A stretch of DNA of 62,787 nt, the filler included, from Corallochytrium limacisporum Hawaii (Eukaryota > Protista > Pluriformea): assembly GCA_002811645.1 (NCBI GenBank). It is 4 parts of 4 records of this genome, joined end to end, with 100 filler letters (N's around TTAATTAATTAA, not from the genome) between each part and the next. Parts side by side here need not be neighbours in the genome. Positions count along the whole stretch, not along the records: positions 1 to 29,124 come from PDIP01000075.1; 3 more parts are not named here. One strand, given 5' to 3'. Shown here one piece after another: positions 6,001-27,978 of this stretch. Under the pieces are notes generated by a model. It made no database searches, was not told the DNA's origin, and saw only the letters and a program-made list of their open reading frames with translations. Numbering within the stretch: the first letter of the stretch is position 1; every line of letters starts with the position of its first letter. The position numbers and the translations under genes were made by a program.

Positions 6001-7055
6001 TCCTTCCTTTTCCCTGTCCTCCCCCCCACCACCACCACCACCAAAAAAGAAGTAGAAAAATCGTGCCGGACCTTTTGCCTCGTCCTTTGATCTGACCGCC
6101 GTCCCCCTTTTCCCAATTTCTTTTTTCTGTGTCAGTTCTTTTTGTTCCGGCTAACCCCCACCCCTTTCCTCTCTCCTCCCTTTTACAGGCATTGTCCACC
6201 TTTCTTTGTTTCCTTCGTTTCGAAAAGGATTTTTTTTGTGCCACTCTTCTCGCTTCTTCCCCCCTCCCCCCGTCTCCATTTCGGGGCCTCCTTTTTCCTA
6301 ATACCCCGGCCCGGGAAAAAAAAAGGATGGAAGGGAAGGTGGCGAGAGTTGGGGAAGGGAGGGGAAGAAAGTAGGGAGAGGGGGAGAGGGAAGGGGGGGG
6401 GTGTCACTTCTCGCTATTATCGCCCTGTCGCAGTGAGGGAGCAAGCGCGCCCCCGCGCTAGGTTCGGCACCACACGGCTCGGACCATGGTGCATAGGTCT
6501 ACCAAAGGTGCTGCATTGGCAAACATTGTTTTCAAATGGTAGGTGTTCCTGATTTTTTTCTTCCCGAGAAATCCTGGAGGCTTCTGGGTTTATCTGTGCT
6601 CTGAAGATGCCAGTGTTGTGAGTACGTTCCGTCGGGACCTTTCATTTTTTGTGCGAGGAAGGACGATCGTACATTTTTTGCTTTGTTGGCCAGGAAAAGA
6701 AGAACCGTGACAAAAAAAGAGGAACGACTGCAACGAGGTGCGTTCTGTTTCAAGGTGTCTTGTTGCTGAAAGTTGAAACACTCCCAAGTACGACGACTTG
6801 TAACAGTTTTCACCCTTGTCGTGGCATCCAAGGTGAAAGTGTGGTACTTGGAACGTGTCTAGGGAGAAGATGAGGTTTTCACCTTTTGCGGCATAGTAAG
6901 TAATGATCAACTGTCGTGTACAAACGGGCCAAACTACAGTCTGTCACCTGTGAATCGTTCAGCTGAAGACATTTCTTCCTTTGAAAGATAAGACTCATTT
7001 GCAGAGTACCCACCGTTACAAATTGGGCTTTACGCAGATATTTACATAGTTGGCA

Positions 7056-8126
7056 ATGAGTCCAAACGTCCACACCAAGCGACCCACTCCTGTCGAAGCC
7101 ATGGATGTAGACAACAACAAGATGCCTGAGCCTCAGGCTGACGAGGCATTCACCGGTGGAAACATCTACGAAGAGGGCAACATGCGCCACTACAACGAGT
7201 ATGTCGTTGACATGACCCAGCCTCCAGTCGGCAACGGACGTCATGGTGATGTCTACATGGGTATGCACTCCAAGACCGGCAAGAAGGTAGCAGTCAAGAC
7301 CGTCGTCCGCAAGCAGCGCACAGAAGACCGCCAACGTATGGAGATCCTACTTATGCGTCGTTTGAAGCACCCTAACATTGTCCGCCTGGTTGATGTCATT
7401 GAGACGGACCGGGAGTTCATCCTGATCACAGAGTTTGTTGAGGGTGGCGAACTCTTTAGTCGCATTCGCGATAGTGGCCCGGGATACCTTGAAGAGAAGG
7501 AAATGCGCCACTACTTTGCACAGCTGATTAGTGCTGTGGAGTACTGCCATAAGCACGGAATCAGCCATCGGGACTTGAAGCCGGAGAACATTCTTCTTGA
7601 CGCTGAAGCTGACCGGGTAAAGATTATTGATTTCGGTTTCGGAAACATCATGCAGCCAAACAAGCAGCTCAAGACTCGCTGCGGCTCTCCTCACTACATG
7701 CCTCCTGAGATTGTTCAGGGCAAGCAGTACCAGGGACATGCCGTCGACGTATGGTGTCTCGGCGTGACCCTGTACGTGTCTCTGTGCGGTCGCTATCCGT
7801 TCGACGGTGGCAACATTCAGGAGCTGTATGCTGAGATCCTGACGGCTCCCTTGCACTTCCCTAAGGAACGTCACCTTAGCCTGCAGTGTCAGCAGCTGGT
7901 CTACATGATGTTGGAGCGGAATCCTGCCACGCGCATTACCATTGAGGCTATCAAGGAGCACCCCTGGCTAGTTGCTGAGGAAAAGCAAGCTGTAAGGCTG
8001 ACTCCTTCCAGTACGCGCATGGATCGCAAGTCTGAACCGACCACAAATGGTAAGGCCAACGGCAAGTCAAAACGCCCTGTTGGCAAGGACAAACTGGACG
8101 ATGACAAGAAGTGTGTGATTTGCTAG
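7056..8126 (+). CDS. CAMK-group (AMPK/SNF1/MARK-like) Ser/Thr protein kinase with C-terminal CaaX motif
   Basis: Uninterrupted ORF; first ATG at 7056 (track start 7050 is TTG). Gly loop GNGRHG, VAVK, HPNIVRL, HRDLKPEN, DFG, activation loop TRCGSPHYMPPE, DVWCLGV. Ends KKCVIC-stop. Confidence 0.93.
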   Translation: MSPNVHTKRPTPVEAMDVDNNKMPEPQADEAFTGGNIYEEGNMRHYNEYVVDMTQPPVGNGRHGDVYMGMHSKTGKKVAVKTVVRKQRTEDRQRMEILLMRRLKHPNIVRLVDVIETDREFILITEFVEGGELFSRIRDSGPGYLEEKEMRHYFAQLISAVEYCHKHGISHRDLKPENILLDAEADRVKIIDFGFGNIMQPNKQLKTRCGSPHYMPPEIVQGKQYQGHAVDVWCLGVTLYVSLCGRYPFDGGNIQELYAEILTAPLHFPKERHLSLQCQQLVYMMLERNPATRITIEAIKEHPWLVAEEKQAVRLTPSSTRMDRKSEPTTNGKANGKSKRPVGKDKLDDDKKCVIC

Positions 8127-8779: not shown

Positions 8780-9850
8780 TCATGAGCTTGCCTTCTCCTG
8801 AGCACCGATCTGTCTGGTCAGTTCAATGTACTTCTGTACAGTAGCCTTGGCTGCACCGGAGAGCAATGCGTTCTTTGCCTCCTTGAAGCCATCCTTGAGC
8901 GTCTCCACTCGTCCTGCGACGTACAGAAGCGCGGCTGCCTGAATGCATACGAAATCTGCCTCGGCTCGCTCCTTGCCGTCCAGGATATCGTTGAAGATGG
9001 CTCGGTTATACTGTGCATCGCCACCCTGCATGTCGGTGAGTTTGTGGATCTGGGCGCCAAAATCGTCCACTGGGTGGACCTCATATTGACAAATCGCACC
9101 GTTCTTGATTTCCCAGATGCTCGTCTTGCCCTCCGGGGAGATCTCATCCAGTCCACATTGGCCCCAGCACACGATGGCCCGGTCGACGCCGCGCATCTTT
9201 AGAACTTCGGCCATGACCGGTCCTAAGCCTTCCTGGTAGACGCCAAAGACACCTACTTTGGGACTTGTGGGGTTCATTAGTGGTCCCAAGATGTTGAAGA
9301 TAGTTCGTGTCCCGATTTGCTTTCGCGCCTTAGCTACGTTAGCCATGGACGGGTGGAATACTTGGGCAAAGAGGAAGGCATAGTTGGCCTGCTCGATTAC
9401 CTCCTTCAATCCCCTAGGACTCACGCTCAGGTCCGCACCCATCGCTTCCAGTAGATCCGCAGATCCGCACTTGCTGCTGGCTGCACGATTCCCGTGTTTA
9501 GCGACGCGTAATCCAAAGCTAGCAACAACCAATCCAGCAGCGGTGCTGACGTTGAAAGTGTCCACACCATCACCTCCCGTGCCAACAATGTCCAGTGTTG
9601 TACCCCAGTCCTCGCACAGATTCGCGTGGGCTAGCATTTCCTCCACCGCGCCATTCACGACTATCGGATCATGACCGCGCTTGAGTTTCAGGGCTATGAG
9701 CAGTGCACCCTTTTGTGACTCTGTGGCGATGCCTTCAGCCATTTCCTTGAATGCACCGCGGACCTTGGTGTGCAGGCCCTCAATCTCATTAGGACCATCG
9801 CAGAGGTCCTTGATCAAAGTCCTAGTTACCGGTCCTCCCTCGTTCGCCAT
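8780..9850 (-). CDS. TRP4: Anthranilate phosphoribosyltransferase
   Basis: DIVGTGGDG, TFNVST, AKHGNRAASSKCGSADLLE, FLFAQVFHP, RTIFNILGPL and GLDEIS are TrpD signature motifs; 356 aa monofunctional enzyme. Confidence 0.97.
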   Translation of the reverse strand: MANEGGPVTRTLIKDLCDGPNEIEGLHTKVRGAFKEMAEGIATESQKGALLIALKLKRGHDPIVVNGAVEEMLAHANLCEDWGTTLDIVGTGGDGVDTFNVSTAAGLVVASFGLRVAKHGNRAASSKCGSADLLEAMGADLSVSPRGLKEVIEQANYAFLFAQVFHPSMANVAKARKQIGTRTIFNILGPLMNPTSPKVGVFGVYQEGLGPVMAEVLKMRGVDRAIVCWGQCGLDEISPEGKTSIWEIKNGAICQYEVHPVDDFGAQIHKLTDMQGGDAQYNRAIFNDILDGKERAEADFVCIQAAALLYVAGRVETLKDGFKEAKNALLSGAAKATVQKYIELTRQIGAQEKASS

Positions 9851-10480: not shown

Positions 10481-10981
10481 TGCGCAAGCGCGGCCCGAGG
10501 AACAAGGGGGAGAGAGTTCTTCGGATGGCGGTTGATTATTTGATTTTTTGATTTTTAATCAAATGTTCTCTGAATCGTTTCACCCGAGAAGAGGCGGGTG
10601 ATCAGGGCGACCAACCTCAGGAAGAAAATCCCTACGCCCGTGGTCTCGCCACAGGGCAAGCCCGACCACGTCGTTTATAGGTGCCTCGGATTGTCTGGAA
10701 CTTGGGCTCTCTTTCTCTACTCGCCCTTGGAAAAGGTACTTGGTTCAGACTTCTGAACATGGCTTGATATAATGTCAACGACACCTGGGTGACCAAAGAA
10801 GACCGTCTCAACCGGACCAACTACGAAGCCAGGCATCGATAGTTGACGAATGGGCGGAAACTTCAGAACGATCAATTTGATCAGTTAGACATGGATCGGC
10901 TTGGATGAAGGGCTTAGCGACCCCAAAGTGGGCGCATTATATAAACTCAATTCGGTCACCTAGTGAAAGCAAACTTAAACA

Positions 10982-13900
10982 ATGGCACTGCACAGCGTTG
11001 TACAAATCGTGTCCACCCGACAGGCCTCCTTAGCAGAGACCTACCCGGAGGACGCATTAGTGATCCCTGCCAAGGGGCAGTCTGCTTTGCGTGACCCAGT
11101 CGCTTCGGGTATGTACGAATCCTATGAAACAGTCTGCAGCAGCAATGCGAAGGATTCGGCAAACGACACCCAGAGCACCGACGATCTGCCCGGCCACGGT
11201 GACGGGGGGAGGGGCGACACTGCTCGCTTTGAATGGGTGTCCAAGTGGCGGTTCGACAATGTAGATCGACAAAGTGTGGCCTCGAGCGCGGGTATAGAAG
11301 GCATTGGTGGCGATGCCACCGCTGACGATGAATTGCAGAAATTGGACAGCGGTGAATCACTGAACCAATTCCCGGTGGCCGTGCCGACCGCCTCCGACAC
11401 GGGTAGTATAGGTGCTCGGTCGCAACCATCGGATCGAAAGGGTAAGGAAAGAGCTAGGGCCAGCAGCACCAGTACCAATCTGCGCCGTCAAAAGACTGAG
11501 GACCGAGATAAGCGCGTCGTAGTGTACAACATTTCCCTTGGCGGGACATATTGCTGTAGTCGACGGTACAGAGAGTTTGCTGCCTTGGCACGGCATCTGA
11601 AGGACATGTACGGCTACAGTGCGTCGTTGCCGGCGCGGTGGCCTATGGTCTTGAACACAGAGCAGGTACGTGCGCGGAAACTACGGCTAGAGAAAATGAT
11701 GAACGAAATCCTTGGGGAGAAACTTGTGGCCAATGACCCGATGGTGCACCACTTCCTGGAACCTCACGCGATTGTCAACCGCGCGGACTTTGCGGAGAAG
11801 CTGCTTTCATGGATGGCGGATGAGGCGAACACGGACGCAGACAACAGCGTGCTCTTCGATCTACGCGGTTACGCTATCCTGCTGTTAGGCAATCCGTACG
11901 CAGATATGGAGTCGCAACAGGGTCACGTTGACATGTCCAAGAATCATCGACATCACCAGCATTCGGCCCACCAACAGAAACAAGATGACCACGATCAGAA
12001 TGAGCCACTATCACTCCCGCGGGCTTTTAGTGACGGTGTTCAGAACAGCGCGCCGCAGCAGGAACCCAGTCCGCCTACGTCAGGTCGAGTGTCACCGATA
12101 AAGAAAGTGGCGACGTTGCCAAAGCTGGCGATTGAGGAAGCAAAGACTATTGACCGGAATGTGAAGCACATGGGTCCGCTAGTGATCCAGCGTGGTATCC
12201 ACAATTTGGTCAGCAATATGGCGGACACCGTCACAAAGCTCACTCCTCGGGCGCTGCAGTCGCGTAGCAAGTCCGTAAACAGCGATAGATCGGGAGAGGT
12301 GCAATTTTTCACTGAAACACAAGATGAAGTCATGTCCGTTGAGAGCGATTCGACTGCCTCTGAACATTCGTTCGCATCACCGATGTTGAAGAGCGAAACT
12401 GCGCCACTGTTTGGCGACGGTGTGCGGCTAACAAAGTATGACTTCATGTTGCAAGAGGACGTGGAGTCATTTAGCTCTTCACTTAACTCGTCTTTGCGAC
12501 AGAGCCCTCCACGGAATCATGAAGTTGCCACATCTTCCACACCGCGAGGGCTTGGGCCCAGTGCTCGCAATGACTACAAGGACGAACTGGTCACCATCAA
12601 GGCCCTGCCGCAAATGAAGCTGGCACCAGCCATTCCTGCCAGTCACGCAGTCATGATTGATGCTATATTGGATCATGTGCGACGTATTAATAAGGACACG
12701 TCAACGAGCGAGACAAAGACTCAGATCCGACAGGGCGCGGCAGACGACAGACAAGCAATGCGAGAACGGCAGAGGGAGGACCGCATTCGGCGTGCCAAAT
12801 TGCAGAAAGAGCGCAAGGCGGAAAAGAAGAGAGACCATGGGAGCAGTCGACAGACACCTGCCTCGCCGGATATGGAGGAGAAGGACCAGTCTGTGCTAGA
12901 CAAACTACGGGACGCTCTGGCGGGCAGAGAAGGCCGCAAGGAAGCCCGACAGAAGGAACAGGCAATTATTGATAACCGCAAGCGCTCACTGGATGCAGTG
13001 GGTCGAGACATGAGCATCGATCTGGTTGATGACGAACTAATGGATCTTGCCAGTGCGGTCAGTGGTCCGCGCTTCTCTTCAAACCCAAACGTCTTGACTA
13101 TGCAGCGGTCGCTTTTGAAGTCAAACAGCATGGCTGTCGATGAAAAGGAACCGGTCACACAGGACAAAGGGAATCGATGTCGGAGCGACGAGCCCCCTAC
13201 CACTGCGCTTAATTCCCTTTCGTCAAGGATGCGCAAGATCTCTGAAACTAGCGCAGCATCCGGGACAGAGTCGCAGTATGGCAGCACGTCGCAACACGTG
13301 CGGACCGGTGCTGCCGAGGGGGAAACTGTCAGTATCAAGTCCGGAAGTGCTTCGAGGGCAGCGGAAAGTGCTGTGGCGGCACCAGTGGAGAACCCTCTGT
13401 CAATGTCCATACCAACCATCTTCTCGGAGAGTCCGCTTCAAAAAGCTTTCCGCGCGGTGGATCGGGAGTCGTTGAAACCGAATATTAAGCTTCAACCGAC
13501 GGAATGGCAACTGATGGACGCCAATTCGGGCATACGGGTTTTCATGCGGTCGCCCATTACGGTGACTGTCACTGGTGATGACACACCAGTTCCAATCTTA
13601 CCCAACGCACTTTCGGTGATGAGCATGGACGATAAGCACCAGCCTCTCCCCTCTAAGATGCGTGAGCGGAATGCCTCGGAGTCCGCGGAACCTGAGGTCC
13701 GCCTGCACCGCCTATCAATGTCCCTTGAACGGCTGCCCTCCGCTGCTGTCGTGGATGAAGCAACCCTCTCAAACCGACTGCCGCAAGTGGACGGCGTGCA
13801 GCTGACGAAGGCTGAACGGACTGTCATCGAAAGATACGCCCGCGACGCAGACTACCGGTACCATTTGCGCGAGGTCAAGGCGGAGTCACTCATGTTTAGC

Positions 13901-16900
13901 CCACCCCAAGCGGTCTTTGAACAGCTATATTCGCTAACGCATCGCCGAGACATTGACCCGGCTATGGCTACTTGTGCGGTGGTAAACCGCATTAACGAAC
14001 AGACTAGGGTTGAGCGGTGGCGTTTTCACAAAATTTGGCCCATCAGCTACCGGGAATTCAGGGTGCTGAGCCATTTCCAGATCCAAAGGGACGGTACTAT
14101 TGTTCTTCTGTACTTTTCCTTGCCCTCTCATGACCCGCTTGCAGAAGAAGAAGAAGCAGGCGCCGGGACGGCTACAAAGAAAGCAACGAGTGGACGCCCT
14201 GAAGACTCCGATGGCGACCCTCTGGAGCGTATCGACTCCAGAAGCAAGAGGAAGGAAATTCAGGATACCATTGCAGACGACCAGGAGGAAGGTACCATAT
14301 TCTATTCTGCATTTTGGATTCGACCATTGGGCACGGATCTCGGTGCGTCGTATGTCATGTACGCTGGTTGTGTGCATATGGGCTATGGCGCACCATCCTT
14401 TGTCGATCATTACATCAATGTCCAGCGGCCCCTGGCCATGCTCAGTCGCGTCGCGGAGCGCCTACGTACCTTGGACAAGGAGACTCTCGGTCTCATCAGC
14501 CTGCCGCGCAACGCCGTGCCACAGGTGGATGACTGTATTGGCGTCAATTATTTTGGCCAGACCGGGACGTTTGTGGGTGCCGGCAGTGTGATGGAGACGA
14601 ATCTGTCGTTCCTCTTTTTGGATCGCAACATGCATGCCTTCCTCTACAGGGGCCAAGCAAAAGGCTTACGGCAGCAACAACAGCAGCAGCAGCGGCAGCA
14701 GCAGCAGATGGTGTCTGGAGGAGATTCCACGGAGGAGGCTCCAACATCAGGCTTGCTGGCACCGGCCACCCAAACAGAAGACCTGCCATCCAAGCTTGGA
14801 TCGCCCCGGCGGACTGCGGACCAAAGCGGCCGTGACGATATGCTCAATTTCATCGACAACGCCAGTACGGATGTAATCGAAGATGCCCGTCCAGAAGCTG
14901 TGTCCTTACTAAGCCGAATCCGCCCGATCCTTGACACACGTGAACGCACTGATATTGCTATGGCCCTTAGTCAAGCGTACTATCGCATGCAGTACATGCT
15001 TAACGCACCGGTGGGCAGCGAAGGCTGGATTAGCGCTGGCGTCGCTGACGGTGGTGTCCGACTAGGTATGAACCCATCCCAGACTCAGTTTCAACTCATA
15101 CGTGCCGAGTTCTTTACCAAGGATCTGAACCCACGCCAGGTCTTGAAAGTCCTTACGACGCCGGCCTTACGGACAATTCTGATGCCGGGTTTAAGGCAAT
15201 GCCGAGTACGGCCCCACTGCCGCCTGCACACCGAGACTAGTGGATTTGATGTTGACATAGAGGACAACAACCAGCAAAATACGGACTTCCTGGCCGAGAC
15301 CAGTCCAGTGCGTCTGGAGCAGTGGGTCTACGGCAATTATCTTCTGCTGTCCCCACGCCACTTCAATGTCGCAACCTACGCGCAGGAAGATGATACAGGT
15401 GCAATTTTCATGGTAAGCACCACAACATCATCTACTGGAGATGACAGCGACTCTGCGCCAGCGTTTGGCAGCGTTGAAGGAACCATTGACTACTTGGGCT
15501 TCATTCTTGAACCAGTGGCAGACACAGTGGCTGACAACGCGCGCCCCAGCAGTACACTATTCCGTTCTACGCCGACCCCTTCAGGCAGAGCTGCTGCTGG
15601 CACGACCTCTGGCAAAGCCCGTGCAGCAGCATCGGCAACTGGGGAGAGCAAGAAACAGCGCAAGGGCAAGGGTCCTGCCATAGATGTGGGCAGCGGTGGC
15701 ACCATCGTGCATATGGTCTTGGCCATCGATCTAGATACTTCTTTGCCGCCGTTCATGTGGCGGGGCTTTGCGGAGGCGCACGCATTTGCTCTGAAAGAGA
15801 TCCCTGTGGTTCACCGGAGGCACGCTGCTAAACTGTCAGAGGCAAAGGTGAGTACCAGTGGAAGTAGCCCTGGTCCTCCCATAGATGCTATCAATCGACC
15901 GCTGCACCCGTTCGAAGCACAGGACCCAATTCGGTCCGGCGATGCCCAAAGCGAGGTGCTGGCTACCATCTACAGCAGCCTCTGTGGCCGTCACCCGGGG
16001 CTCACGGCCCGAGAACTCCCATCACCGGAGCGTGGTCGCAACCCTGCTGTATCCCCATTGCCAGGCGACGAGGCGGCAACGTCAGTTACATCCAATGTGC
16101 GCACGCTACTTCAGGAGAATCAGCGACGTACAGTGGCCTTCGTCCACCAGGGTGGCCTGGTCCTCAGCCGGCTTGTGATAGCTGCTCTCTACCTAAGCTT
16201 GCGCCTTGCGTATACACTTGTCTGGCTCTTCCTGTACGGCACTGTCGGCCTGACCGCCGGTATGATGCTATTGGTTCTCGCGCGGCCCCTGTTTCAACCT
16301 TTGCTGTTGACGGCCGAAGTTCGTGGCGACGGAGCGTTTGGGTGGACTGCAACTCCTGTGCAGCTGTCTTTCGGAATATCCGCCAGTTCGATATCATTTC
16401 AAGAAAGCACACGCATTGCGGCTGAGGGACTGCTACGCGAGATGACTGCTGTGACCGCAGGTGATCACACTGCGTTCGTGCGCATAGCAATGGAGGGCGG
16501 GCGCGGCATGTTCATCGCAGTGATGCGCGGCTTGGAATTGGTGCCAGGGTTTGAGCGTACGTCGGAACACATCCTTGGGGTGACTGGGCTGGTTCGCGAC
16601 CTCGCAGTACCCCGTGAGGTCTTAAAGCTGCCGTCCACAGCCGTCGGCGTTGTTGCAGTGCTCTGTGTTTCATCCGTTGCGGCCTATTTCAGTTTTGTCG
16701 TTTGTCTGGCAGCTCTAAGGCATTTGATTCTCATTGCGCACAACACCTTGCGACATCTGCGGTTTGATGGCACTTGGAGTTTTCGTCGGAGTGTCGCAGA
16801 TCGCGAGAAGAGCGACCATGAGCTGCTCAGAGCAAACAACCAAGTCTCACCGAAGCTTCCGTCTTGGCTGGAACGCGCGTCGGATATTCCCGTGCGGACG

Positions 16901-18673
16901 CTATATATTGACGTACACGAGGCCGTTGCAGCCCTACGTAAACGCCGCGAGCAGCGCGGCCTGAGCGCGGCCGTGAGTCATTTGCTCGCAAAGGCCGTCG
17001 GGGAGGTGCTGGCACCAGAGCTATCGAAACTGGGCCTGTCTCCGAACAGGGCCTTTGGTGGTGGCCTTGGCTCTCAGGATTTGTCTGTCCCGGAAGCGTC
17101 GACACGCACTCAGAACAGCGCGGGTGGAATGAGCGAGGCGGATTTTGATCTCTGTGTGACGCAATGTCCGTCTGTAACCGGTGCTGTCTACGGCCAAAAC
17201 TATGGCCTACCTGACCCGGACTCTGGAGAGTCCAGGTCGTACGACCAGGAGTTTGACGGGGACGACTCCTCGGACAACGAAGATGATGACACAATCCTCC
17301 ATGAAGGTGTCGACATTGACGAGCAGGACATGGACCCGACGGTCACGTCTGCATTCTTTGGCAATATTGTTGGCTGTCGGCACGTCGTGCTTACGCGAAT
17401 CCGGGCCATGACTCTGCGCCAAGTCAGCCACGCGCTAGCTATGCGCTGGGCCTATGCGCGACCGACGGGTGAGCTGGCAGCACCGTCCCTGCTGCCAGCT
17501 ACTTTCTTGCGGGCCACGACGTGGCTGCTCGGACTCACTGTGGAGACGCAACGTCATATTCTGCACCGCGCGCATTGTGGAGAGGCCGGTATGCTGGTCA
17601 ATATCAGGCCGCCGCCCCCCTCGTCGTCAGCCTCGGTGGCGAGAACGAAAGGTTCAAAAAAGGACAGCAGCGGCACGCCGTCCGTGGACATGGACAGCAG
17701 TGTAGCCCTGCCACTCTCTCTCCTTGACCCGGCTCAACACGGTGGCACGCTGCGAAGTGGCCTCGTCGCCGACTTGCGTGCGTTGCGGTGGTACTTCGGA
17801 CGGTTGATGGCCGAGGTTTGGTACCGATATGTAGTCAATGACCCAAAGACGCCCGCTTCAGTCTGGCACCAATTTCATCATCACCGACAGCCCTCGATGC
17901 CAGTAGCGCCCGCAAAGGAATTGACAACGCGCGTGATGCTACGGACTCTACTCTTTGGTCTTGGTCTCTGTTTCTACCTCATCATTTGGTGGCCACTGCG
18001 GGAGCTTTTACGAACTGTCTTTGCGGAGGAAGTAGCCGCAGTGCGTGATACTGCGGACTCCATCTCTTCGTCCCAGCATTACCATCGACACCGCCACACG
18101 CACCGCGGCGTGGGAGCGAGAGTTGGTGGGGTTCAAGGGTCTCTTTCGTCGCAGCAGCGTCCCTCAGCTCTGGTTGCTCTGCTTGGCTATGGGCAGCGTA
18201 CCCTCAATCGCCGCCTGGTCCACGACCTCGCTGCATACATTACCGCAAGCAAGCCAAAAGCGCATTATACACCCGTACCGGCTCTGGCCCCATCCGTCAG
18301 TGGCGGCGGCGGTAGCAGCGCCAATGATAACGAGGAGGATGCGATCGAGCAGCATGGACCGCTCTGTCTGGATGATCTGCGAGTCATGATCCTAGCTGGT
18401 CGAATCCAGCTCATGCAGACACCGTCAGACATGCTGCAGACGGTCGCAGCCCCTACACAATGTCTACCTGGTGGTATTGGAGGTGCACTGGCCACATTGG
18501 GCAAGGAGGCGCTGTTCAAGCACTCGAAGTCTGGATCGAAGACTCAGGCCGGGCAGGGCCTACCGAGGCTTCACCTCGTGCTCACTGTCGCCTTCGATGG
18601 CAGCGTCTTGCCACACAACTTTGCGAGCACTTTTGGACGTGCTCTGAATGAGGCGATGCAGCTGCCCGCGTAA
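10982..18673 (+). CDS. 2563-aa multidomain protein: SNX27-like PX domain, two START/SRPBCC lipid-binding domains, transmembrane helices, C-terminal degenerate 2-oxoacid dehydrogenase E2-like domain
   Basis: 7.7-kb stop-free ORF with A at -3 of the ATG. PX at about 11510-11762 (VVYNI..CSRRYREFAAL..LPARWP..RARKLRLEK..HFL). START-like regions at about 13500-14470 (W....GIRVF, IWPISYREF, DGT, GTIFYSAFWIRP) and 15020-15800 (LLSPRHF, VEGTIDYLGFILEP, IDLDTSLP). Hydrophobic helices at about 16150-16290, 16640-16740 and 17935-18000. E2-like termini at about 16880-17035 and 18570-18670. Confidence 0.85.
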   Translation: MALHSVVQIVSTRQASLAETYPEDALVIPAKGQSALRDPVASGMYESYETVCSSNAKDSANDTQSTDDLPGHGDGGRGDTARFEWVSKWRFDNVDRQSVASSAGIEGIGGDATADDELQKLDSGESLNQFPVAVPTASDTGSIGARSQPSDRKGKERARASSTSTNLRRQKTEDRDKRVVVYNISLGGTYCCSRRYREFAALARHLKDMYGYSASLPARWPMVLNTEQVRARKLRLEKMMNEILGEKLVANDPMVHHFLEPHAIVNRADFAEKLLSWMADEANTDADNSVLFDLRGYAILLLGNPYADMESQQGHVDMSKNHRHHQHSAHQQKQDDHDQNEPLSLPRAFSDGVQNSAPQQEPSPPTSGRVSPIKKVATLPKLAIEEAKTIDRNVKHMGPLVIQRGIHNLVSNMADTVTKLTPRALQSRSKSVNSDRSGEVQFFTETQDEVMSVESDSTASEHSFASPMLKSETAPLFGDGVRLTKYDFMLQEDVESFSSSLNSSLRQSPPRNHEVATSSTPRGLGPSARNDYKDELVTIKALPQMKLAPAIPASHAVMIDAILDHVRRINKDTSTSETKTQIRQGAADDRQAMRERQREDRIRRAKLQKERKAEKKRDHGSSRQTPASPDMEEKDQSVLDKLRDALAGREGRKEARQKEQAIIDNRKRSLDAVGRDMSIDLVDDELMDLASAVSGPRFSSNPNVLTMQRSLLKSNSMAVDEKEPVTQDKGNRCRSDEPPTTALNSLSSRMRKISETSAASGTESQYGSTSQHVRTGAAEGETVSIKSGSASRAAESAVAAPVENPLSMSIPTIFSESPLQKAFRAVDRESLKPNIKLQPTEWQLMDANSGIRVFMRSPITVTVTGDDTPVPILPNALSVMSMDDKHQPLPSKMRERNASESAEPEVRLHRLSMSLERLPSAAVVDEATLSNRLPQVDGVQLTKAERTVIERYARDADYRYHLREVKAESLMFSPPQAVFEQLYSLTHRRDIDPAMATCAVVNRINEQTRVERWRFHKIWPISYREFRVLSHFQIQRDGTIVLLYFSLPSHDPLAEEEEAGAGTATKKATSGRPEDSDGDPLERIDSRSKRKEIQDTIADDQEEGTIFYSAFWIRPLGTDLGASYVMYAGCVHMGYGAPSFVDHYINVQRPLAMLSRVAERLRTLDKETLGLISLPRNAVPQVDDCIGVNYFGQTGTFVGAGSVMETNLSFLFLDRNMHAFLYRGQAKGLRQQQQQQQRQQQQMVSGGDSTEEAPTSGLLAPATQTEDLPSKLGSPRRTADQSGRDDMLNFIDNASTDVIEDARPEAVSLLSRIRPILDTRERTDIAMALSQAYYRMQYMLNAPVGSEGWISAGVADGGVRLGMNPSQTQFQLIRAEFFTKDLNPRQVLKVLTTPALRTILMPGLRQCRVRPHCRLHTETSGFDVDIEDNNQQNTDFLAETSPVRLEQWVYGNYLLLSPRHFNVATYAQEDDTGAIFMVSTTTSSTGDDSDSAPAFGSVEGTIDYLGFILEPVADTVADNARPSSTLFRSTPTPSGRAAAGTTSGKARAAASATGESKKQRKGKGPAIDVGSGGTIVHMVLAIDLDTSLPPFMWRGFAEAHAFALKEIPVVHRRHAAKLSEAKVSTSGSSPGPPIDAINRPLHPFEAQDPIRSGDAQSEVLATIYSSLCGRHPGLTARELPSPERGRNPAVSPLPGDEAATSVTSNVRTLLQENQRRTVAFVHQGGLVLSRLVIAALYLSLRLAYTLVWLFLYGTVGLTAGMMLLVLARPLFQPLLLTAEVRGDGAFGWTATPVQLSFGISASSISFQESTRIAAEGLLREMTAVTAGDHTAFVRIAMEGGRGMFIAVMRGLELVPGFERTSEHILGVTGLVRDLAVPREVLKLPSTAVGVVAVLCVSSVAAYFSFVVCLAALRHLILIAHNTLRHLRFDGTWSFRRSVADREKSDHELLRANNQVSPKLPSWLERASDIPVRTLYIDVHEAVAALRKRREQRGLSAAVSHLLAKAVGEVLAPELSKLGLSPNRAFGGGLGSQDLSVPEASTRTQNSAGGMSEADFDLCVTQCPSVTGAVYGQNYGLPDPDSGESRSYDQEFDGDDSSDNEDDDTILHEGVDIDEQDMDPTVTSAFFGNIVGCRHVVLTRIRAMTLRQVSHALAMRWAYARPTGELAAPSLLPATFLRATTWLLGLTVETQRHILHRAHCGEAGMLVNIRPPPPSSSASVARTKGSKKDSSGTPSVDMDSSVALPLSLLDPAQHGGTLRSGLVADLRALRWYFGRLMAEVWYRYVVNDPKTPASVWHQFHHHRQPSMPVAPAKELTTRVMLRTLLFGLGLCFYLIIWWPLRELLRTVFAEEVAAVRDTADSISSSQHYHRHRHTHRGVGARVGGVQGSLSSQQRPSALVALLGYGQRTLNRRLVHDLAAYITASKPKAHYTPVPALAPSVSGGGGSSANDNEEDAIEQHGPLCLDDLRVMILAGRIQLMQTPSDMLQTVAAPTQCLPGGIGGALATLGKEALFKHSKSGSKTQAGQGLPRLHLVLTVAFDGSVLPHNFASTFGRALNEAMQLPA
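14672..14707 (+). repeat. Coding CAG/CAA repeat (polyQ tract QQQQQQQRQQQQ)
   Basis: cagcaacaacagcagcagcagcggcagcagcagcag in the linker between the two START-like domains. Confidence 0.9.
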
Positions 18674-18743
18674 CTGGGCACCATGGCCCTGGGGTAGACA
18701 ATCAATTTCTTCTTTATGACTAGATTAGATTACTTGTACATTT

Positions 18744-21212
18744 TTAGCAATTCAAGTCTTTTGTGCCATGGCTCTGTTGTTTCTTGTTGGACACATTAAG
18801 AAAGACTGCTGCTTTGGCTGCCAGACGCACCTCGTTCGAGGCAGCTCCAATTTTCGTGTGGTTCCTGCGTCGTTTACACTGATGTCTGGTCTGTAGCCTC
18901 CTCTCCTGCCTCCGTGTCTGTGGTGAGGAGCGATTGGTGCTTTCGAAACAGGTCTCTGCTACCGAAGGGACAGTGGAGGTGACGCCGCAAAGCGCTGTAC
19001 CAGTGCCGCATTGCGGTGGTTCCACAATGTGAATTGGATGTATCGTCGGTCGGCCGTGGGCACATTGGAAAGGCAACTTGCACAGATTCAGCTTGAACAC
19101 TACGTCCTTGGCCTGTTCCGAATCCAAGACTTGTCCAAATCTCAATGCCGAGTGGCATGCACGGCTGGCTAGGGCTCTGTGGAGGGGTGCTGGCGGTGAG
19201 TGCAGTGGAAGATGGGCAAGGCTACCTTCTTCTACGCACTCGCAGACCATCTCTTGTACCCTCCGGCGGATCACATCTGCATCAAATTGTGGAACAGATG
19301 CGTCGAGTGATTCCGCGTCCTGGACAGGGCAGATGTTTTTGTTTGTGGTGACTGGCATACGGGCAAATCTGCCGGATGCATTCCTCAGTACTACGTCGGG
19401 TGCCTCATAGACGCGTAACGCAAACGATGAACACTCGCTATCGGCCCTAGTGGCTTCGGACACCTTTTCGACATCGCAACCAAAGCCCCAACGATTCAAA
19501 CGGCTAGCAAACTTTTCAGCAACGACTTGGTGTCGGACAGTGGGTGGCAAGATGATCCGAGCATGCATTGGCAAAGCAATGGGTTTAGTTAGGGATATCT
19601 CGTGACAGGGAGCTCCCGCGGTTGAGCGCCGACTTGCTTCACTTGTGGCCATGTGCAGCAATTTTTCAAAGATGATGCGTTCGTCTGCTGCATGCTGGTC
19701 CACAAATGCCAGGACCTCAATGACCTTACCAGTATCCCCATCTTCTGCCATGCCGACCACGGGAATGTATTTTCGATCGATCTGAGCAAGGACGCGGCAA
19801 TCTTTGAAGAAGCTAACGTCGAATCTCAGATCACCGGATGCCAATGACATGTTCTTCGTATCCAGGTTGGGCAAAGGGCGGATGGACTTGCGTCCGCTGC
19901 CTTTTTGCGTCAATGTAAGAACCGATTTCAATGAAGTGGACTTGATGTTCTGATCCTGGCATTTAGAAAGAATCAGTGGCGTAGACAATTGTACAGTATT
20001 GGGCCCCGACGAAGAGCCCAGGTTCATCGATTTCTTTGCAATTGTTCGAGCGATTCTCTTGGCTGATGTCAACGTACTGTGTCTGGCAGCCTTGATGTTG
20101 GCTTGGTCCGCGTATCCATATTGCTGAAAGACGGTGTGCGCGATCTGGGATGCCAGTGACTCCAAAACGTAGTCCAATTCATTTGCTAGATGAAATTGCG
20201 ATAGCGTTCCAACGCGAGAGAACTCAGGATCATAGTTGTCGGAAAGTGTCACAATATCCAAATAGAAGGGGCCATGTCGATCGACGTACCGATTAGGGTC
20301 TGTTTGGTGTACTCGGCGGCCATTTTGACCAGACTCTCGGAGGAGAGTTGTGATCCGGTTGCGAAGCTTTCGATGGACCACATCCATGACTTCTTCAGGG
20401 GGAAAGGGAACAGAATTGATCATCAAAATGTTGGTGAATAAGCAAGACATAGGTGTAGTGCAGAGGACTGCATCACCTGTCACCGATGATGAATCATCTC
20501 GACATCGAATGCGTTTCAACCTTAAATTTTCGAAACCAGTCTGTTTTTCAACAATCTTCGTAAATCGCTCCAATCGAGTTTGGACCCTGTCCCATGAGAA
20601 AGGATGAGAATGACCACTCTGTGCATCATACAATTGGAATCGTATGCGAGGTCGCGCTACTGCAAATTGCCCAACCATCTCAACTATAGATTGTACCGTC
20701 TTTTTGTAATCTCCAAACATCTTCCGCACAGCCATATTGTGGAAAAGATTCTCGATGACGACCCGTGTGCCATGGCCCGGTAGCTGGACTGCAGCATCTC
20801 CCTGCACCTTCACTTTGCCGTCGAGCCACTGTTTCTCCCTACTCCATTCTTCGGTCTCTGTTCTGGTGTAAACGACAACAGTTGAGCAGAGTTGTATTAA
20901 GGCACTAAGCGCAAATCCTTGAGATCCAATTAGAACATTGTGAAGCTTAGATGCTGGTGACTGATCAATCACTTTTGAGGTAGCTCCGTTCGTACCCAAG
21001 AGGGTGAATGACTCACCGTATGGAATCCCTTCGCCGTCATCTTCTACAGTGACTTTTCCTTTGGTACCATCTATCGTGATGCATACTTCAGTGGATCCTG
21101 CATCGATAGAGTTTGTGATCAGGTCGCGTACAGCAACGACAACATCATTTATGCGATACGCCGCAGCGACATCTCGCTGGACTCCAATTGGCAGAAGTCT
21201 GATCGATGCCAT
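18744..21212 (-). CDS. MLH3: DNA mismatch repair / meiotic crossover MutL homolog MLH3
   Basis: N-terminal GHKL ATPase (NSIDAG, DDGEGI, TSK, GTRVVIENLFHNMAVR). C-terminal QIDRKYI, endonuclease motif DQHAADERIIFE, ACHSALRFG and CKLPFQCAHGRPT; FQCAHGRP is typical of MLH3 rather than PMS2. First ATG at 21212 (track start 21236 is TTG). Confidence 0.93.
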   Translation of the reverse strand: MASIRLLPIGVQRDVAAAYRINDVVVAVRDLITNSIDAGSTEVCITIDGTKGKVTVEDDGEGIPYGESFTLLGTNGATSKVIDQSPASKLHNVLIGSQGFALSALIQLCSTVVVYTRTETEEWSREKQWLDGKVKVQGDAAVQLPGHGTRVVIENLFHNMAVRKMFGDYKKTVQSIVEMVGQFAVARPRIRFQLYDAQSGHSHPFSWDRVQTRLERFTKIVEKQTGFENLRLKRIRCRDDSSSVTGDAVLCTTPMSCLFTNILMINSVPFPPEEVMDVVHRKLRNRITTLLRESGQNGRRVHQTDPNRYVDRHGPFYLDIVTLSDNYDPEFSRVGTLSQFHLANELDYVLESLASQIAHTVFQQYGYADQANIKAARHSTLTSAKRIARTIAKKSMNLGSSSGPNTVQLSTPLILSKCQDQNIKSTSLKSVLTLTQKGSGRKSIRPLPNLDTKNMSLASGDLRFDVSFFKDCRVLAQIDRKYIPVVGMAEDGDTGKVIEVLAFVDQHAADERIIFEKLLHMATSEASRRSTAGAPCHEISLTKPIALPMHARIILPPTVRHQVVAEKFASRLNRWGFGCDVEKVSEATRADSECSSFALRVYEAPDVVLRNASGRFARMPVTTNKNICPVQDAESLDASVPQFDADVIRRRVQEMVCECVEEGSLAHLPLHSPPAPLHRALASRACHSALRFGQVLDSEQAKDVVFKLNLCKLPFQCAHGRPTIHPIHIVEPPQCGTGTALCGVTSTVPSVAETCFESTNRSSPQTRRQERRLQTRHQCKRRRNHTKIGAASNEVRLAAKAAVFLNVSNKKQQSHGTKDLNC

Positions 21213-21363
21213 ACGGCTATCGTGTGCCCATAACAACTAAATTTTCTTTCATGCCCTCTTTTTGTTTATGTAGCAGACGCTTAGCTGCAGAGCCAGATCC
21301 ATTGATCACCCATTGTGCACATAGATTGCCTGAAATACTCAAGTAGCTGGCAAGTGTTAGGAG

Positions 21364-22295: not shown

Positions 22296-24287
22296 ATGGG
22301 AGATATAGACCACGGCATGGTGCCGGGAACGGTTCCGACGTTGTTGAAATTGGATGAGACCGATGGTCTACATGTCCCGGATGGCTCGATCGAACAGCTT
22401 GAATGTGACGTCGACATTGAGCACCGGTTGAGCATCAAACCGACAGACACTCGTGCAACTACGGCCTTCAAGGCCTTACCTGAGGAAATTATGGAGAAAA
22501 TCATTTATTTTTGCTTTCATGACCGGACATGTAAAGACAACCGGCCAATGACGGGAGTAGCCTACTCTGCGGCGGCAGAAACAGGGCCACAGTCGCGGCG
22601 AAAGATCACAATCACGCGACCGGAACATGTTGCTCAACTTCTACAACTCGCGGGGATTAGTCGACGGTGGCGAAGCTTGATTTTCATCATGCTGGACGGT
22701 ATCAATCTGCGGCGTACAGAAGGTCGCATGGGACCGGAGATGCTTCAGAGTATTCTCACAGCGATGGGCCGGAAGCCCTGGAAGGAATGTTTGCGATCCG
22801 TAACGCTAGCACACTGTCACGCGGTTGATGACTACGCGGTTATGCTCGTCGCCCGTCTGTCCGAGCTAAGGGAGGTAGACTTGTCTGGTAGTTATGCATT
22901 AACCGACGAGGCCTGCACGTACCTCACACGGCTGAAGAAACTGCAAAGCCTAGGCTTGAGCTGCTGCCGCCATCTCACTGACCGATCGCTTGATATCATC
23001 GCAAAGGGCTGCGGCCAGAGTCTGCGGAGGATAGACGTAAGCCGATGCATGGGCTTGACACCAGAGGGCATGATCAGCTTTGCAAAACAATGCCCGGATT
23101 TGGAGTCGGTGGATGTCGGCAACGTCTCTGGTATCGACGCGGAGACCCTGCCAGCGCTAGCGCAGGCATTGGGCCCGAAACTGCAGTCACTCGTGCTCGC
23201 AGGCAACCGGCGCATCAATGGGCACGCTTTAGCTACCATGGCCTCCCTCTGTCCACAGTTGGAGAGCTTGGATGTAACAGGTTGTGGCATGCTGACCGAC
23301 ATGGGCATCGTCAGTCTCGTGCAGAGCTGTCCAGGGCTACGCAGTTTGAATTTAAGTCTACTGGGACGCGTCTCCGATGGCGGGTGCGAGGCGATTGCCC
23401 TCCACTGCCGCAACTTGGAGGAATTGAATATCCGTGGGTGTGGGGGAATCACGATCAATGGCTTCCGCGCTCTGGTTCACTCCACGCACCTCGGCCATAC
23501 GCTGCGCAGGGTAGTGATCCAGGGCGGTGACTGTCTGAGTGATGAGCTGCTGGCAGCATTAGCGGAAAACTGGCACTTGCTCGAAAGTTTACGGATTGAG
23601 GACTGTACAAGGATCTCTGATGCTGGTTTGGCGTCCTTGTACCCGGTGCTGAGCCGCGGTCTCCTTACGCAGATAGTCCTCGATTCGGGTTTGGGAATTA
23701 CGGACGCAGGCATCTGCGCAATGCTTGGGGGTCGCAACACAGACTCTATGTCTTTATCAAGCAGTCCACCGTCGCATAGCGTATCATCGACGCTAACGCG
23801 GACACATAGCGAAGTGAGTGCTACAGACTCTGAAGATAATCTCCGCTTCAAACTCACCCGTCTCTCTCTGACGGCGATGCCGAATCTCAGTGACCGATCT
23901 GTACGCTTTATTGGCGAGCGCTGTCCAGATCTGCAGGTTTTGGCCCTGTCGTCATGTTGTGGTGTCAGCGATGCGAGTGGTGAGTACATCGCTTCCCTTG
24001 GACGGCTCCGGGTACTGTCATTGCGTGCATGCACACGCATCATAGGGAGTTTTGGCTACCTCTTACTGCGGTCTTGTCGATTCCTGGAGTACCTGGACGT
24101 TTCTCACTGTCCGTTCCTCACTAGCGAACTCACTATCAGCGCCGCCCAACTTCCACGCCTGCGCGCTTTGGAAATGGTTGGCTGTGGAGACGTGGATGCG
24201 GCTGTGGTCCACAGGTGTGCGGCCAAAGGTATTGAAGTTAACACTGGCCGATACGTATGGGTCCCGTTGCCTGGGTGGTCAATGTGA
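22296..24287 (+). CDS. F-box / leucine-rich repeat (FBXL-type, cysteine-containing LRR) protein
   Basis: F-box FKALPEEIMEKIIYF...LAGISRRWRSL followed by more than 12 LRR-CC repeats of the form L..L.L..C..lTD.g. Confidence 0.92.
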   Translation: MGDIDHGMVPGTVPTLLKLDETDGLHVPDGSIEQLECDVDIEHRLSIKPTDTRATTAFKALPEEIMEKIIYFCFHDRTCKDNRPMTGVAYSAAAETGPQSRRKITITRPEHVAQLLQLAGISRRWRSLIFIMLDGINLRRTEGRMGPEMLQSILTAMGRKPWKECLRSVTLAHCHAVDDYAVMLVARLSELREVDLSGSYALTDEACTYLTRLKKLQSLGLSCCRHLTDRSLDIIAKGCGQSLRRIDVSRCMGLTPEGMISFAKQCPDLESVDVGNVSGIDAETLPALAQALGPKLQSLVLAGNRRINGHALATMASLCPQLESLDVTGCGMLTDMGIVSLVQSCPGLRSLNLSLLGRVSDGGCEAIALHCRNLEELNIRGCGGITINGFRALVHSTHLGHTLRRVVIQGGDCLSDELLAALAENWHLLESLRIEDCTRISDAGLASLYPVLSRGLLTQIVLDSGLGITDAGICAMLGGRNTDSMSLSSSPPSHSVSSTLTRTHSEVSATDSEDNLRFKLTRLSLTAMPNLSDRSVRFIGERCPDLQVLALSSCCGVSDASGEYIASLGRLRVLSLRACTRIIGSFGYLLLRSCRFLEYLDVSHCPFLTSELTISAAQLPRLRALEMVGCGDVDAAVVHRCAAKGIEVNTGRYVWVPLPGWSM

Positions 24288-24415: not shown

Positions 24416-25939
24416 TCATCCAACGGTGGTCCATGCTCCACCCTCATCATCGTCATCGTCCGCGTGCTCCGTGACCTTGCCCTTCGCAGACAACCCGCCA
24501 TCCTTGTCTTCCACGACATCCAGCGCCGCCCTCGGCTGCATCATTTGCGTCGGCTGAAAAACCGCATCCGGATCGTGTTGGAGATAGCCAAACTCCCCGG
24601 TGTACGACACATGAGCACTGGCAGCATTCTCATCAATGCATACCGCAGAGCAAGACCAAACAGTAAACGTTCCGAGATCCAGATCGACTGTTGAGTTTAG
24701 CAACTCGGCGTCAGCATCCTCGTCCATGGATGACGTGCTCATCGTCAATTGCGGCACCAACGTGCTGAGTAACTGGAATTCGCAGGCTCTGGCTGCTCCA
24801 CACCGGTCACAGTTTGGCACTAAGTTCGAGCCAGAGCGTGGCATGGGGGTTGCAGTTTTGCTGGAGATGGATAGGGCAAACGCATCGCTCGAATCCAAGG
24901 GCCAGTCCGGACTATAGCGCAGAATCTGTTCCGGACTGCGGTTAAGGGTGCGCTGGTACTCGTAGAATTCGGGGTCCTCAGCCAACGCCTTTGGCAGACT
25001 AATTTCATACGACTCGCCTTGCCATTCTTCACTATTACCGTCCTTATTTTCTTTACTCCGCGCTTTAGCCTGGCCTTGAGCTTTTAGAGAAGTGTCTTGT
25101 GCCTGCGCCCCTGCTGCGTTCGAAGATGTTGCCGTGTTGCTGGCATGCTCGTCTTCCTCGTCATCATCATCATCGTCATCAATCATTCCGGTTGCTTTCG
25201 ACCGCCCCTCTTCGGGCTCCATATCAGTAGCCAGGTAGTAAGGATCAATAAGAAAGGCCACCGACGTGTCAATGGCCCGACAAGGTACTGCTTCCACTGT
25301 TTTCGTACTCGCTGCCTTTGGTTCTATTTTACCAGAGGACGGCTGCTGGCCCTGCTGCTCGTCTCGCTTCTGCAACGACGCCGCCAAATCGCTGAAATCA
25401 ATGCCTCCGCAAGATGGCTCTCCAAAATTATCGTTCTCACCACCTCCCATTCCCCAATCATCGTCTGCGTTGGGTACAGCAAAGGGATCTGTGGTTTGCT
25501 TTGGCTGTTCCTCATCAGTTGCATTGCTCATTTCTTCTGCATTCTCGTTTATCCGTGTCATGACACGTACTACGGCCCAAGCATTTTGGTGAATACTCGC
25601 ACAGTTTGCAGTCACGGACAGGGGGCTGCTCTCGCTGTTGCTAATGTCTGCTGATTCCTTTCCCTTTCTTGACTCTCTACCCTCGGTCTTTCTTTGAATA
25701 CAGGCAAAGACATAGACCGTGCGATCGAATCCCGTCCTACTATGCGGAGTGTACAGTTGGGTGACAAGAGCTAGCGGCCGGTTACAATTTCCACATTTCG
25801 GCCAGAAACTGTTGGGGATGCCTTCAGGAACAATGGGTCTACCACCAATCTTCGAAGTCCAATATCCTCCCTTCAGATCCTCCTTTTCCGATTGAATATA
25901 AGCATCTGGATATCCCAGTAGGCACGGAGGCCGTTTCAT
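24416..25939 (-). CDS. PDCD2L: PDCD2-like / TSR4 uS5 chaperone
   Basis: LLGYPD, SKIGGRP, CGNC..L.LVTQLYTP, DRTVYVFAC, acidic linker, E.YE, PEQILRY, VPNCDRCGAARACEFQL, GTFTVWSC..C. Probable start MKRPP at 25939; an in-frame upstream ATG exists at 26023. Confidence 0.9.
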   Translation of the reverse strand: MKRPPCLLGYPDAYIQSEKEDLKGGYWTSKIGGRPIVPEGIPNSFWPKCGNCNRPLALVTQLYTPHSRTGFDRTVYVFACIQRKTEGRESRKGKESADISNSESSPLSVTANCASIHQNAWAVVRVMTRINENAEEMSNATDEEQPKQTTDPFAVPNADDDWGMGGGENDNFGEPSCGGIDFSDLAASLQKRDEQQGQQPSSGKIEPKAASTKTVEAVPCRAIDTSVAFLIDPYYLATDMEPEEGRSKATGMIDDDDDDDEEDEHASNTATSSNAAGAQAQDTSLKAQGQAKARSKENKDGNSEEWQGESYEISLPKALAEDPEFYEYQRTLNRSPEQILRYSPDWPLDSSDAFALSISSKTATPMPRSGSNLVPNCDRCGAARACEFQLLSTLVPQLTMSTSSMDEDADAELLNSTVDLDLGTFTVWSCSAVCIDENAASAHVSYTGEFGYLQHDPDAVFQPTQMMQPRAALDVVEDKDGGLSAKGKVTEHADDDDDEGGAWTTVG

Positions 25940-27806: not shown

Positions 27807-27946
27807 CCTCTCTCTCTCTCTCTCTCTCTCTCCCTCTCTCTCTCNNNNNNNNNNNNNNNNNNNNNNNNNNNNNNNNNNNNNNNNNNNNNNNNNNNNNNNN
27901 NNNNNNNNNNNNNNNNNNNNNTGTGCCTCTCTCTCTCTCTCTCTCT

Positions 27947-27977: not shown

Positions 27978-27978
<1 letters not shown>

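What the first reader, a model, noticed from the sequence alone, without database searches (positions are those of the whole stretch)
10982..18673. Giant PX-START-START-TM protein fused to an apparently inactive 2-oxoacid dehydrogenase E2-like domain: candidate new membrane-contact lipid-transfer scaffold
Seen: one 2563-aa ORF with a PX domain, two START-like domains, several membrane helices and a C-terminal region. That region begins W...SDIPVRTLYIDVHEAVAALRKRREQRGLSAAVSHLLAKAVGEVL, includes HVVLTRIRAMTLRQVSHAL and MILAGRI, and ends LVLTVAFDGSVLPHNFASTFGRALNEAMQLP. Established: the E2 acyltransferase core runs ..vD.t.l..lR......s...l.KAva.aL ... pVi..a....l.eI ... aIL.vGrI ... lTls.DHRv.DG..aa.Fl..l...le.P. 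It trimerises and can build cages, and its His in DHR is catalytic; here DHR aligns to DGS, recalling the inactive E3BP paralog. Inference: a membrane-anchored, PI3P-binding lipid shuttle that uses a co-opted metabolic fold for oligomerisation or acyl-CoA sensing. I know of no described protein with this architecture.
Basis: partly seen in the sequence, partly recalled or inferred. Interest (0 to 1): 0.85.

Follow-up and report, generated by a model that had tools for sequence, protein, structure and literature searches.

The report
Lipid-shuttle protein with dead acyltransferase tail
A single-celled relative of animals appears to make one giant protein that joins a membrane-targeting domain, two lipid-carrying domains and membrane anchors to a disabled copy of a little-studied acyltransferase; no search here found this combination elsewhere, and it may move or sense lipids where two organelles touch.

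Summary
The 2563-aa ORF is real: one open frame, no joints in contigs of two probable RNA runs, and purifying selection between isolates (17 synonymous, 7 non-synonymous changes). PX is solid (SNX27-like). START1 is well supported; START2 is weak but resembles START1. Pfam and canonical E2 profiles miss the C-terminus. It does match an apparently unstudied family of stand-alone, lipoyl-less, catalytic-domain-only E2-like proteins (bacteria; protists, often with an N-terminal membrane anchor). Nine family blocks chain in order over aa 1933-2562 (Z 8.8 against genome decoys; Z 4.7 without the best block), split by inserts of about 100 and 250 aa. A cage is unlikely, because the C-terminal helix that links trimers is absent. 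No homologue of the fusion was found. Best reading (about 45%): a membrane-anchored, phosphoinositide-targeted lipid-transfer tether with a pseudo-acyltransferase that trimerises or binds lipid. Function is inferred only. The organism is probably Corallochytrium limacisporum.

The parts
10982..18673 (+). Single-frame gene, 2563 aa (P0001); transcript probably about 10780-18700
11513..11767 (+). PX domain (aa 178-262), SNX27/SNX17-like; Arg195, Tyr196 and Arg232 kept, PPK-loop Lys replaced by Arg219
   Evidence: Pfam E 3e-11; SNX27 PX E 2e-13
11940..13453 (+). Long low-complexity, probably disordered linker (about aa 320-824) with a charged helical stretch
   Evidence: composition; inference
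13454..14497 (+). START domain 1 (about aa 825-1172, with inserts); closest in-genome START is the CERT-like one
14954..15847 (+). Probable START domain 2 (about aa 1325-1622, with inserts)
   Evidence: Pfam E 0.15; E 3e-3 after removing inserts, and similarity to START1 at E 3e-7
16154..16285 (+). Hydrophobic segment A (aa 1725-1768), one or two membrane helices
   Evidence: hydropathy
16286..16642 (+). Loop of about 120 aa between the membrane segments; no family match; lumenal or cytosolic depending on topology
   Evidence: inference
16643..16750 (+). Hydrophobic segment B (aa 1888-1923), placed like the N-terminal membrane anchor of protist members of the lipoyl-less E2-like family
16778..17014 (+). 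E2-like domain, first part: SxRR block (aa 1933) and Trp-strand-helix-helix block (aa 1959-2011)
   Evidence: rank 1 of all positions, z 7.7; HMM E 1.6e-5; genome-wide E 0.134
17336..17596 (+). E2-like domain, middle (aa 2119-2205): strand, helix with the invariant Arg2160, Leu-Pro hydrophobic helix typical of the family
17597..18361 (+). Insert of about 250 aa inside the E2-like domain, with a hydrophobic helix (aa 2318-2340) that cannot be a single membrane pass; possible second, re-entrant anchor
   Evidence: topology is inference
18380..18667 (+). E2-like domain, last part: ILAG strand (aa 2467-2476) and final strand-helix (aa 2530-2562); D-H-R replaced by D-G-S at 18596-18604; no trimer-linking helix after Pro2562
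   Evidence: rank 1 with three profiles

Best explanation
A lineage-restricted fusion protein that works like a membrane-contact lipid-transfer tether. Steps: (1, shown) one gene makes PX, START1, probable START2, membrane segments and a C-terminal domain descended from the stand-alone, lipoyl-less E2-like acyltransferase family. (2, shown in sequence) that domain has lost the catalytic His and Arg and the helix that links trimers into cages. (3, inferred) segments A and B, perhaps with the hydrophobic helix in the large insert, fix the protein in one membrane (ER or lipid droplet); the PX domain on a 500-aa flexible linker reaches PI3P or another acidic lipid on an endosome or vacuole. (4, inferred) the START domains carry or sense lipid between the two membranes. 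(5, inferred, weakest) the dead acyltransferase still forms the obligate E2/CAT trimer, giving three PX heads and six START pockets per unit, and may bind an acyl-CoA or lipid in its old substrate channel. The likely origin is fusion of a PX-START-START gene to this lineage's membrane-anchored lipoyl-less E2-like gene, of which no free copy was found in the genome.
For: One frame and unjoined contigs; pN/pS 0.14, p 3e-6, with 4 synonymous and 1 conservative change in the E2-like part. PX closest to SNX27 and SNX17, which bind PI3P. START evidence. Family chain score 93.6 vs decoy mean 17.6, max 46.2, 0 of 136 genome windows and 0 of 500 shuffles; without the best block 60.8, again 0 of 136 and 0 of 500. 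Only non-E2 hit of the family profile in the whole genome. 23 of 96 family members have an N-terminal hydrophobic segment at the same place. PX plus membrane anchor tethers ER to endolysosomes in SNX19 (PMC8316374). E2 cores are obligate trimers and need the C-terminal helix for cages (10.1101/2020.07.24.212647).
Against: No orthologue to test conservation. Nothing on localisation or lipid binding. PX Lys is Arg, and Chandra et al. state that all four side chains are required. START2 is weak. Only 17 of 43 strongly conserved family columns are kept (the middle of that alignment is uncertain), and two large inserts could hinder trimer packing. No convincing FFAT motif. Membrane topology is unresolved. 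The function of the parent family is itself unknown.
Confidence: 0.45

Rival explanations
1. A lipid or acyl-CoA sensor and scaffold on a single membrane (endosome, vacuole or lipid droplet): PX and membrane segments bind the same bilayer, START domains sense rather than shuttle, and the dead acyltransferase is the ligand-regulated or partner-binding output.
For: START domains fused to other modules often act as sensors (own knowledge: DLC RhoGAPs, ACOT11/12, HD-ZIP; titles). Long disordered regions suit a scaffold.
Against: A 500-aa linker between PX and START and two tandem START domains fit reaching across a gap better; no signalling domain was found.
Confidence: 0.22
2. The C-terminal domain is still an enzyme, a membrane lipid acyltransferase or transacylase fed by the START domains, using another base or a partner subunit.
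For: 93% of family members keep the His, so the parent is probably active; ciliate-like members vary the His but keep Asp and Arg; the CAT fold includes lipid acyltransferases such as wax ester synthase.
Against: His, Arg and the downstream Asp-Gly are all changed; no free family copy was found to act as partner.
Confidence: 0.1
3. The E2-like part is a decaying relic of a gene fusion that no longer folds as E2; only PX, START and the membrane segments matter.
For: Very long branch (4.0), large inserts, single-sequence model without fold, no significant Pfam match.
Against: All core blocks are kept in order with native spacing in the middle, and the chain ends where the family ends; isolate differences there are 4 synonymous to 1 (small numbers).
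Confidence: 0.12
4. An E3BP-like or cage-forming subunit linked to a 2-oxoacid dehydrogenase core.
For: Loss of the His, as in E3BP; E2 fold in the guided model.
Against: No lipoyl or E3-binding domain, no mitochondrial import signal apparent (PX-bearing N-terminus), separate E3BP and three E2 genes in the genome, no trimer-linking helix, groups with the other family.
Confidence: 0.03
5. An artefact: two or more genes or a mis-assembly read as one frame.
Against: 7.7 kb without a stop; contigs of two independent runs follow it without joints; contig ends match the gene ends in both runs.
Confidence: 0.03

Closest known systems
Stand-alone lipoyl-less ('catalytic-domain-only') E2-like proteins, annotated PF00198 / '2-oxo acid dehydrogenase subunit E2' (e.g. 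Acanthamoeba XP_004353739, Persicimonas, Sappina, Stygamoeba)
   Same: SxRR and Trp start, HLxxKA helix, long hydrophobic Leu-Pro insert after helix 2, terminal strand-helix-Pro; membrane segment just upstream as in protist members.
   Different: Family members are 260-330 aa free proteins, nearly all with DHR; here the domain is fused behind PX-START-START, has inserts of about 100 and 250 aa, and reads DGS. I found no paper that characterises the family.
Canonical E2 (dihydrolipoamide acyltransferase) cores and E3BP/PDHX
   Same: CAT/E2 fold; loss of the catalytic His as in E3BP.
   Different: No lipoyl or peripheral-subunit-binding domain, no trimer-linking helix, membrane-bound, near-zero score on canonical profiles; the genome encodes its own four such proteins.
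START-domain lipid-transfer proteins at contact sites (CERT/STARD11, STARD3, EDR2-like PH-START)
   Same: Lipid-targeting module plus START; STARD3 also has membrane helices (own knowledge). START1 is closest to the genome's CERT-like START.
   Different: PX instead of PH, two START domains, no clear FFAT motif, and a C-terminal pseudo-acyltransferase.
SNX-RGS / Mdm1 tethers (SNX13, 14, 19, 25)
   Same: PX domain plus membrane anchor able to bridge ER and endolysosome (PMC8316374).
   Different: No PXA, RGS or PXC match; different domain order; PX is SNX27-like.

Membership tests
PX domain (PF00787) | Score above the Pfam cut-off | tested here: met
   44.1 bits vs 21.6
PI3P-binding PX (groups II/IV of Chandra et al., PMC6449406) | Arg-Tyr pair, PPK-loop Lys and helix-2 Arg all kept | tested here: inconclusive
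   Arg195, Tyr196, Arg232 kept; Lys is Arg219
START (PF01852), domain 1 | Profile match | tested here: met
   Below Pfam cut-off (18.6 vs 22 bits) but E 2.8e-10 with an in-genome START profile and reciprocal hit to CERT-like START
START (PF01852), domain 2 | Profile match | tested here: inconclusive
   Pfam E 0.15; 3e-3 after hand removal of inserts; similar to START1 at E 3e-7
START | Helix-grip fold with a lipid cavity; lipid binding | not tested
Canonical E2 / PF00198 | Score above the Pfam cut-off | tested here: not met
   No hit at E up to 10
Canonical E2 | Catalytic His in DHR | tested here: not met
   DGS at aa 2539-2541
Canonical E2 / E3BP | Lipoyl and peripheral-subunit-binding domains | tested here: not met
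   No Pfam match anywhere in the protein
Cage-forming E2 cores | Hydrophobic C-terminal trimer-linking helix after the terminal Pro | tested here: not met
   Chain ends one residue after Pro2562; the genome's own E2s carry 4-8 mostly hydrophobic residues there
Lipoyl-less E2-like family | Core blocks present in order, above chance | tested here: met
   Z 8.8 and 11.4; without the seed block Z 4.7 and 6.0
Lipoyl-less E2-like family | Long hydrophobic insert between the helix-2 Arg and the next strand (50 aa vs 12 in canonical E2) | tested here: met
   About 40 aa with Leu-Pro kept at 2167-2168 or 2171-2172
Lipoyl-less E2-like family | Placement in a tree | tested here: inconclusive
   Inside the family (SH-aLRT 97) near protist members, but quick tree, hand-cut core, branch length 4.0
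Lipoyl-less E2-like family | DHR motif and FGSxxxT strand (113 of 120 members have DHR) | tested here: not met
   DGS; FGS block not recovered at its expected place. Hence a degenerate descendant, not a typical member
CAT/E2 fold | Fold from an independent prediction | tested here: inconclusive
   Single-sequence model failed (pLDDT 40); model guided by the family alignment gave Z 15.7, 162 aa, rmsd 3.2 to human E2, which is partly circular
CAT/E2 fold | Homotrimer | not testable with these tools
   No multimer prediction available

The most novel reading that the evidence does not exclude
The lipoyl-less E2-like proteins of bacteria and protists are an unrecognised family of membrane-associated lipid acyltransferases, and this holozoan gene shows the family recruited, as a dead trimeric lipid- or acyl-CoA-binding module, into a new class of contact-site lipid-transfer protein in which the old substrate channel gates START-mediated transfer.
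Probability: 0.2. Interest if true: 0.8.

Novelty: new variant of a known kind. Interest (0 to 1): 0.55.

Why it matters
It would add a new architecture to the lipid-transfer proteins of membrane contact sites, in a close relative of animals, and a new use of the CAT/E2 fold as a pseudoenzyme. The fusion also gives a first hint about a widespread but apparently unstudied family, routinely annotated as dehydrogenase E2 although its members lack lipoyl domains and, in five of six loci checked, lie away from dehydrogenase genes: being fused to lipid-handling domains points to a role in membrane lipids. The limit is that the fusion is so far a singleton with no functional data.

Tried and rejected
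Pfam, NCBIfam and PDB sequence searches of the C-terminus: nothing. phmmer of aa 1947-2563 over 1.84 billion representatives: self only. Word-index search of the START region among long proteins: self only. Alignment search for longer fusions: one ordinary E2; weak evidence, as the words probably came mostly from the first row. ESM Atlas by features: no usable hit, then nucleotidyltransferase clusters at 0.82 or less, treated as chance. Single-sequence AlphaFold: useless. Foldseek of the guided model: no E below 0.001, though E2 chains fill the list. Canonical E2 profiles: near zero. A second candidate for the DHR site (ADLR, aa 2255-2287) was rejected: 1-2 bits vs 10, and it leaves the terminal blocks unexplained. 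Gene neighbourhoods of six bacterial members showed no shared context. Paper searches found no description of the architecture or the family. Rfam: nothing. The family was first fetched with a short DNA pattern written from memory that overlaps the query's best block; this is why the test without that block was run.

Full report
Setting. The window lies on contig C259 of a 24.1-Mb, 286-contig eukaryotic genome whose genes here are mostly single long frames. The size matches Corallochytrium limacisporum, 24.1 Mb (PMC5560861); the identification is an inference. The protein is in EukProt as a singleton cluster.

The gene is real. The frame 10982-18673 encodes 2563 aa with a stop just upstream. 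Two public runs hold it. Both are only guessed to be RNA, but each has about 13 Mb of contigs, and the contig ends fall at the gene's ends. In run X1 one 7921-nt contig is identical over 12760-18699 with no joint, and by its length would start near 10779, about 200 nt before the ATG. In run X2 contigs end at 18692 and would start at 10796. X2 is another isolate: 24 differences, 17 synonymous and 7 not, pN/pS 0.14, p 3e-6. The inserts inside the domains are therefore coding, not introns.

PX and START. PX (aa 188-261) passes Pfam at E 3e-11 and is closest to SNX27 and SNX17, which bind PI3P selectively (PMC6449406). Of the four key side chains, Arg195, Tyr196 and Arg232 are kept; the loop Lys is Arg219. 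START1 is below the Pfam cut-off but scores E 2.8e-10 with a profile of the genome's seven other START domains and finds the CERT-like START at E 1.4e-5. START2 is weak by profile but resembles START1 (E 3e-7 after removing inserts by hand). Hydrophobic segments lie at aa 1725-1768, 1888-1923 and 2318-2340.

The C-terminus is not a canonical E2. Pfam, NCBIfam and PDB searches miss it, as do canonical E2 profiles. The genome has four ordinary proteins of this kind elsewhere: BCKDH, OGDH and PDH E2, and a true E3BP-like protein with DSR.

It descends from a different family. I recalled a family of free E2-like proteins without lipoyl domains and fetched it by a short pattern, then by profile search: 260-300 aa in bacteria, about 300-330 aa in protists such as Acanthamoeba, Sappina, Stygamoeba and Soliformovum. 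23 of 96 have an N-terminal hydrophobic segment and 113 of 120 keep DHR. Its profile hits aa 1972-2012 at E 1.6e-5 (hhalign probability 66%), and this locus is its only hit in the genome apart from the four real E2s (E 0.134 genome-wide). One block alone is marginal, and it overlaps my seed pattern. So I scored nine fixed family blocks in order with free gaps. The best chain runs 1933, 1959, 2060, 2119, 2133, 2167, 2391, 2467, 2530 and scores 93.6 bits, against 17.6 +/- 8.6 for 136 windows of this genome's long frames and 16.8 +/- 6.8 for 500 local shuffles; none reaches it. Without the seed block it scores 60.8, and again none reaches it (Z 4.7 and 6.0). Scanned singly over all positions, four blocks rank first and one second at these places. 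The FGS block is not recovered where expected. The best block scores 32 bits against the family and under 1 against canonical E2, and the domain has the family's long hydrophobic insert after helix 2. A quick tree puts it inside the family near the protist members, on a very long branch, so its place is unsure. Hydrophobic segment B sits where protist members have their anchor.

Structure. A single-sequence model failed. With a family alignment steered by anchor fragments, the core blocks reach pLDDT 75-91 and the inserts stay outside. The model matches human E2 at Z 15.7, 162 residues, rmsd 3.2, and in the Atlas first a catalytic-domain-only cluster. This shows compatibility only, since the alignment itself encodes the fold.

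What is lost. D-H-R reads D-G-S, and the following D-G is also changed; 17 of 43 strongly conserved columns are kept. The chain ends one residue after the terminal Pro. E2 cores are obligate trimers, and cages need a hydrophobic helix after this point (10.1101/2020.07.24.212647). A trimer is therefore possible and a cage unlikely. The third hydrophobic helix lies in an insert between two strands of one domain, so it cannot be a single membrane pass; a re-entrant anchor is the simplest reading (inference).

Mechanism. Most likely (about 45%) the protein is fixed in one membrane by its hydrophobic segments, reaches a PI3P-rich organelle with its PX domain on a long linker, as SNX19 does (PMC8316374), and moves or senses lipid with its START domains, while the dead acyltransferase trimerises the unit or binds an acyl-CoA or lipid. 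Architecture and loss of catalytic residues are shown; localisation, lipid transfer and trimerisation are inferred. Rivals: a sensor on one membrane (22%), a decaying relic (12%), an atypical active enzyme (10%), an E3BP-like subunit or an artefact (3% each).

Distribution and novelty. No relative of the C-terminal region was found among 1.84 billion representatives, none of the START region among long proteins, and no long fusion by alignment search (weak). These searches are limited by divergence, inserts and length windows, so the blank does not prove uniqueness. Paper searches found neither the architecture nor the parent family. Six bacterial members are free genes with no shared neighbours; one lies next to an OdhA-type gene. 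Verdict: a real, new domain architecture, a new variant of contact-site lipid-transfer proteins, so far from one species, with an untested mechanism. Interest 0.55.

Noticed in passing
P0003-P0122, L086-L205: A widespread family of stand-alone, lipoyl-less E2-like proteins (bacteria; amoebozoans and other protists with an N-terminal membrane segment), mostly with intact DHR and a long hydrophobic insert, annotated as dehydrogenase E2; no paper on it was found. Worth a study of its own.
   Followed up: partly
P0004, P0022, P0039 (L152:101-1042): A protist subgroup of that family has DIR, DMR or DLR instead of DHR: a separate loss of the catalytic His in free members.
   Followed up: partly
L004:1489-3048 (-), G000:C268: The genome has a bona fide E3BP/PDHX-like protein (DSR motif), sister to its PDH E2 in the tree.
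   Followed up: partly
window 18744-21236 (-): MLH3-like MutL gene (endonuclease motifs present), tail to tail with the giant gene across 70 bp; contig ends suggest the 3' ends touch or overlap near 18687-18699.
   Followed up: partly
window 8780-9850 (-): Anthranilate phosphoribosyltransferase (TrpD), divergent from the giant gene across about 1.1 kb.
   Followed up: no
window 7050-8126 (+), 22296-24287 (+), 24416-26023 (-): Ser/Thr kinase, leucine-rich-repeat protein and PDCD2_C protein; ordinary housekeeping neighbours.
   Followed up: no
L207, L208, L213 (G000:C39, C143, C54): Other START fusions in this genome, read by eye from the translations: CERT-like PH-START, an EDR2-like PH-TM-START protein, and a protein kinase fused to START.
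   Followed up: no
window 1-7000 and 26100-29124: Long stretches without a long frame or Rfam match; CT repeats around a run of N at about 27845-27926.
   Followed up: no
L259:2060-6792: One actinobacterial-type member of the lipoyl-less family lies head to head with an OdhA-type 2-oxoglutarate dehydrogenase gene; not seen in five other loci.
   Followed up: no
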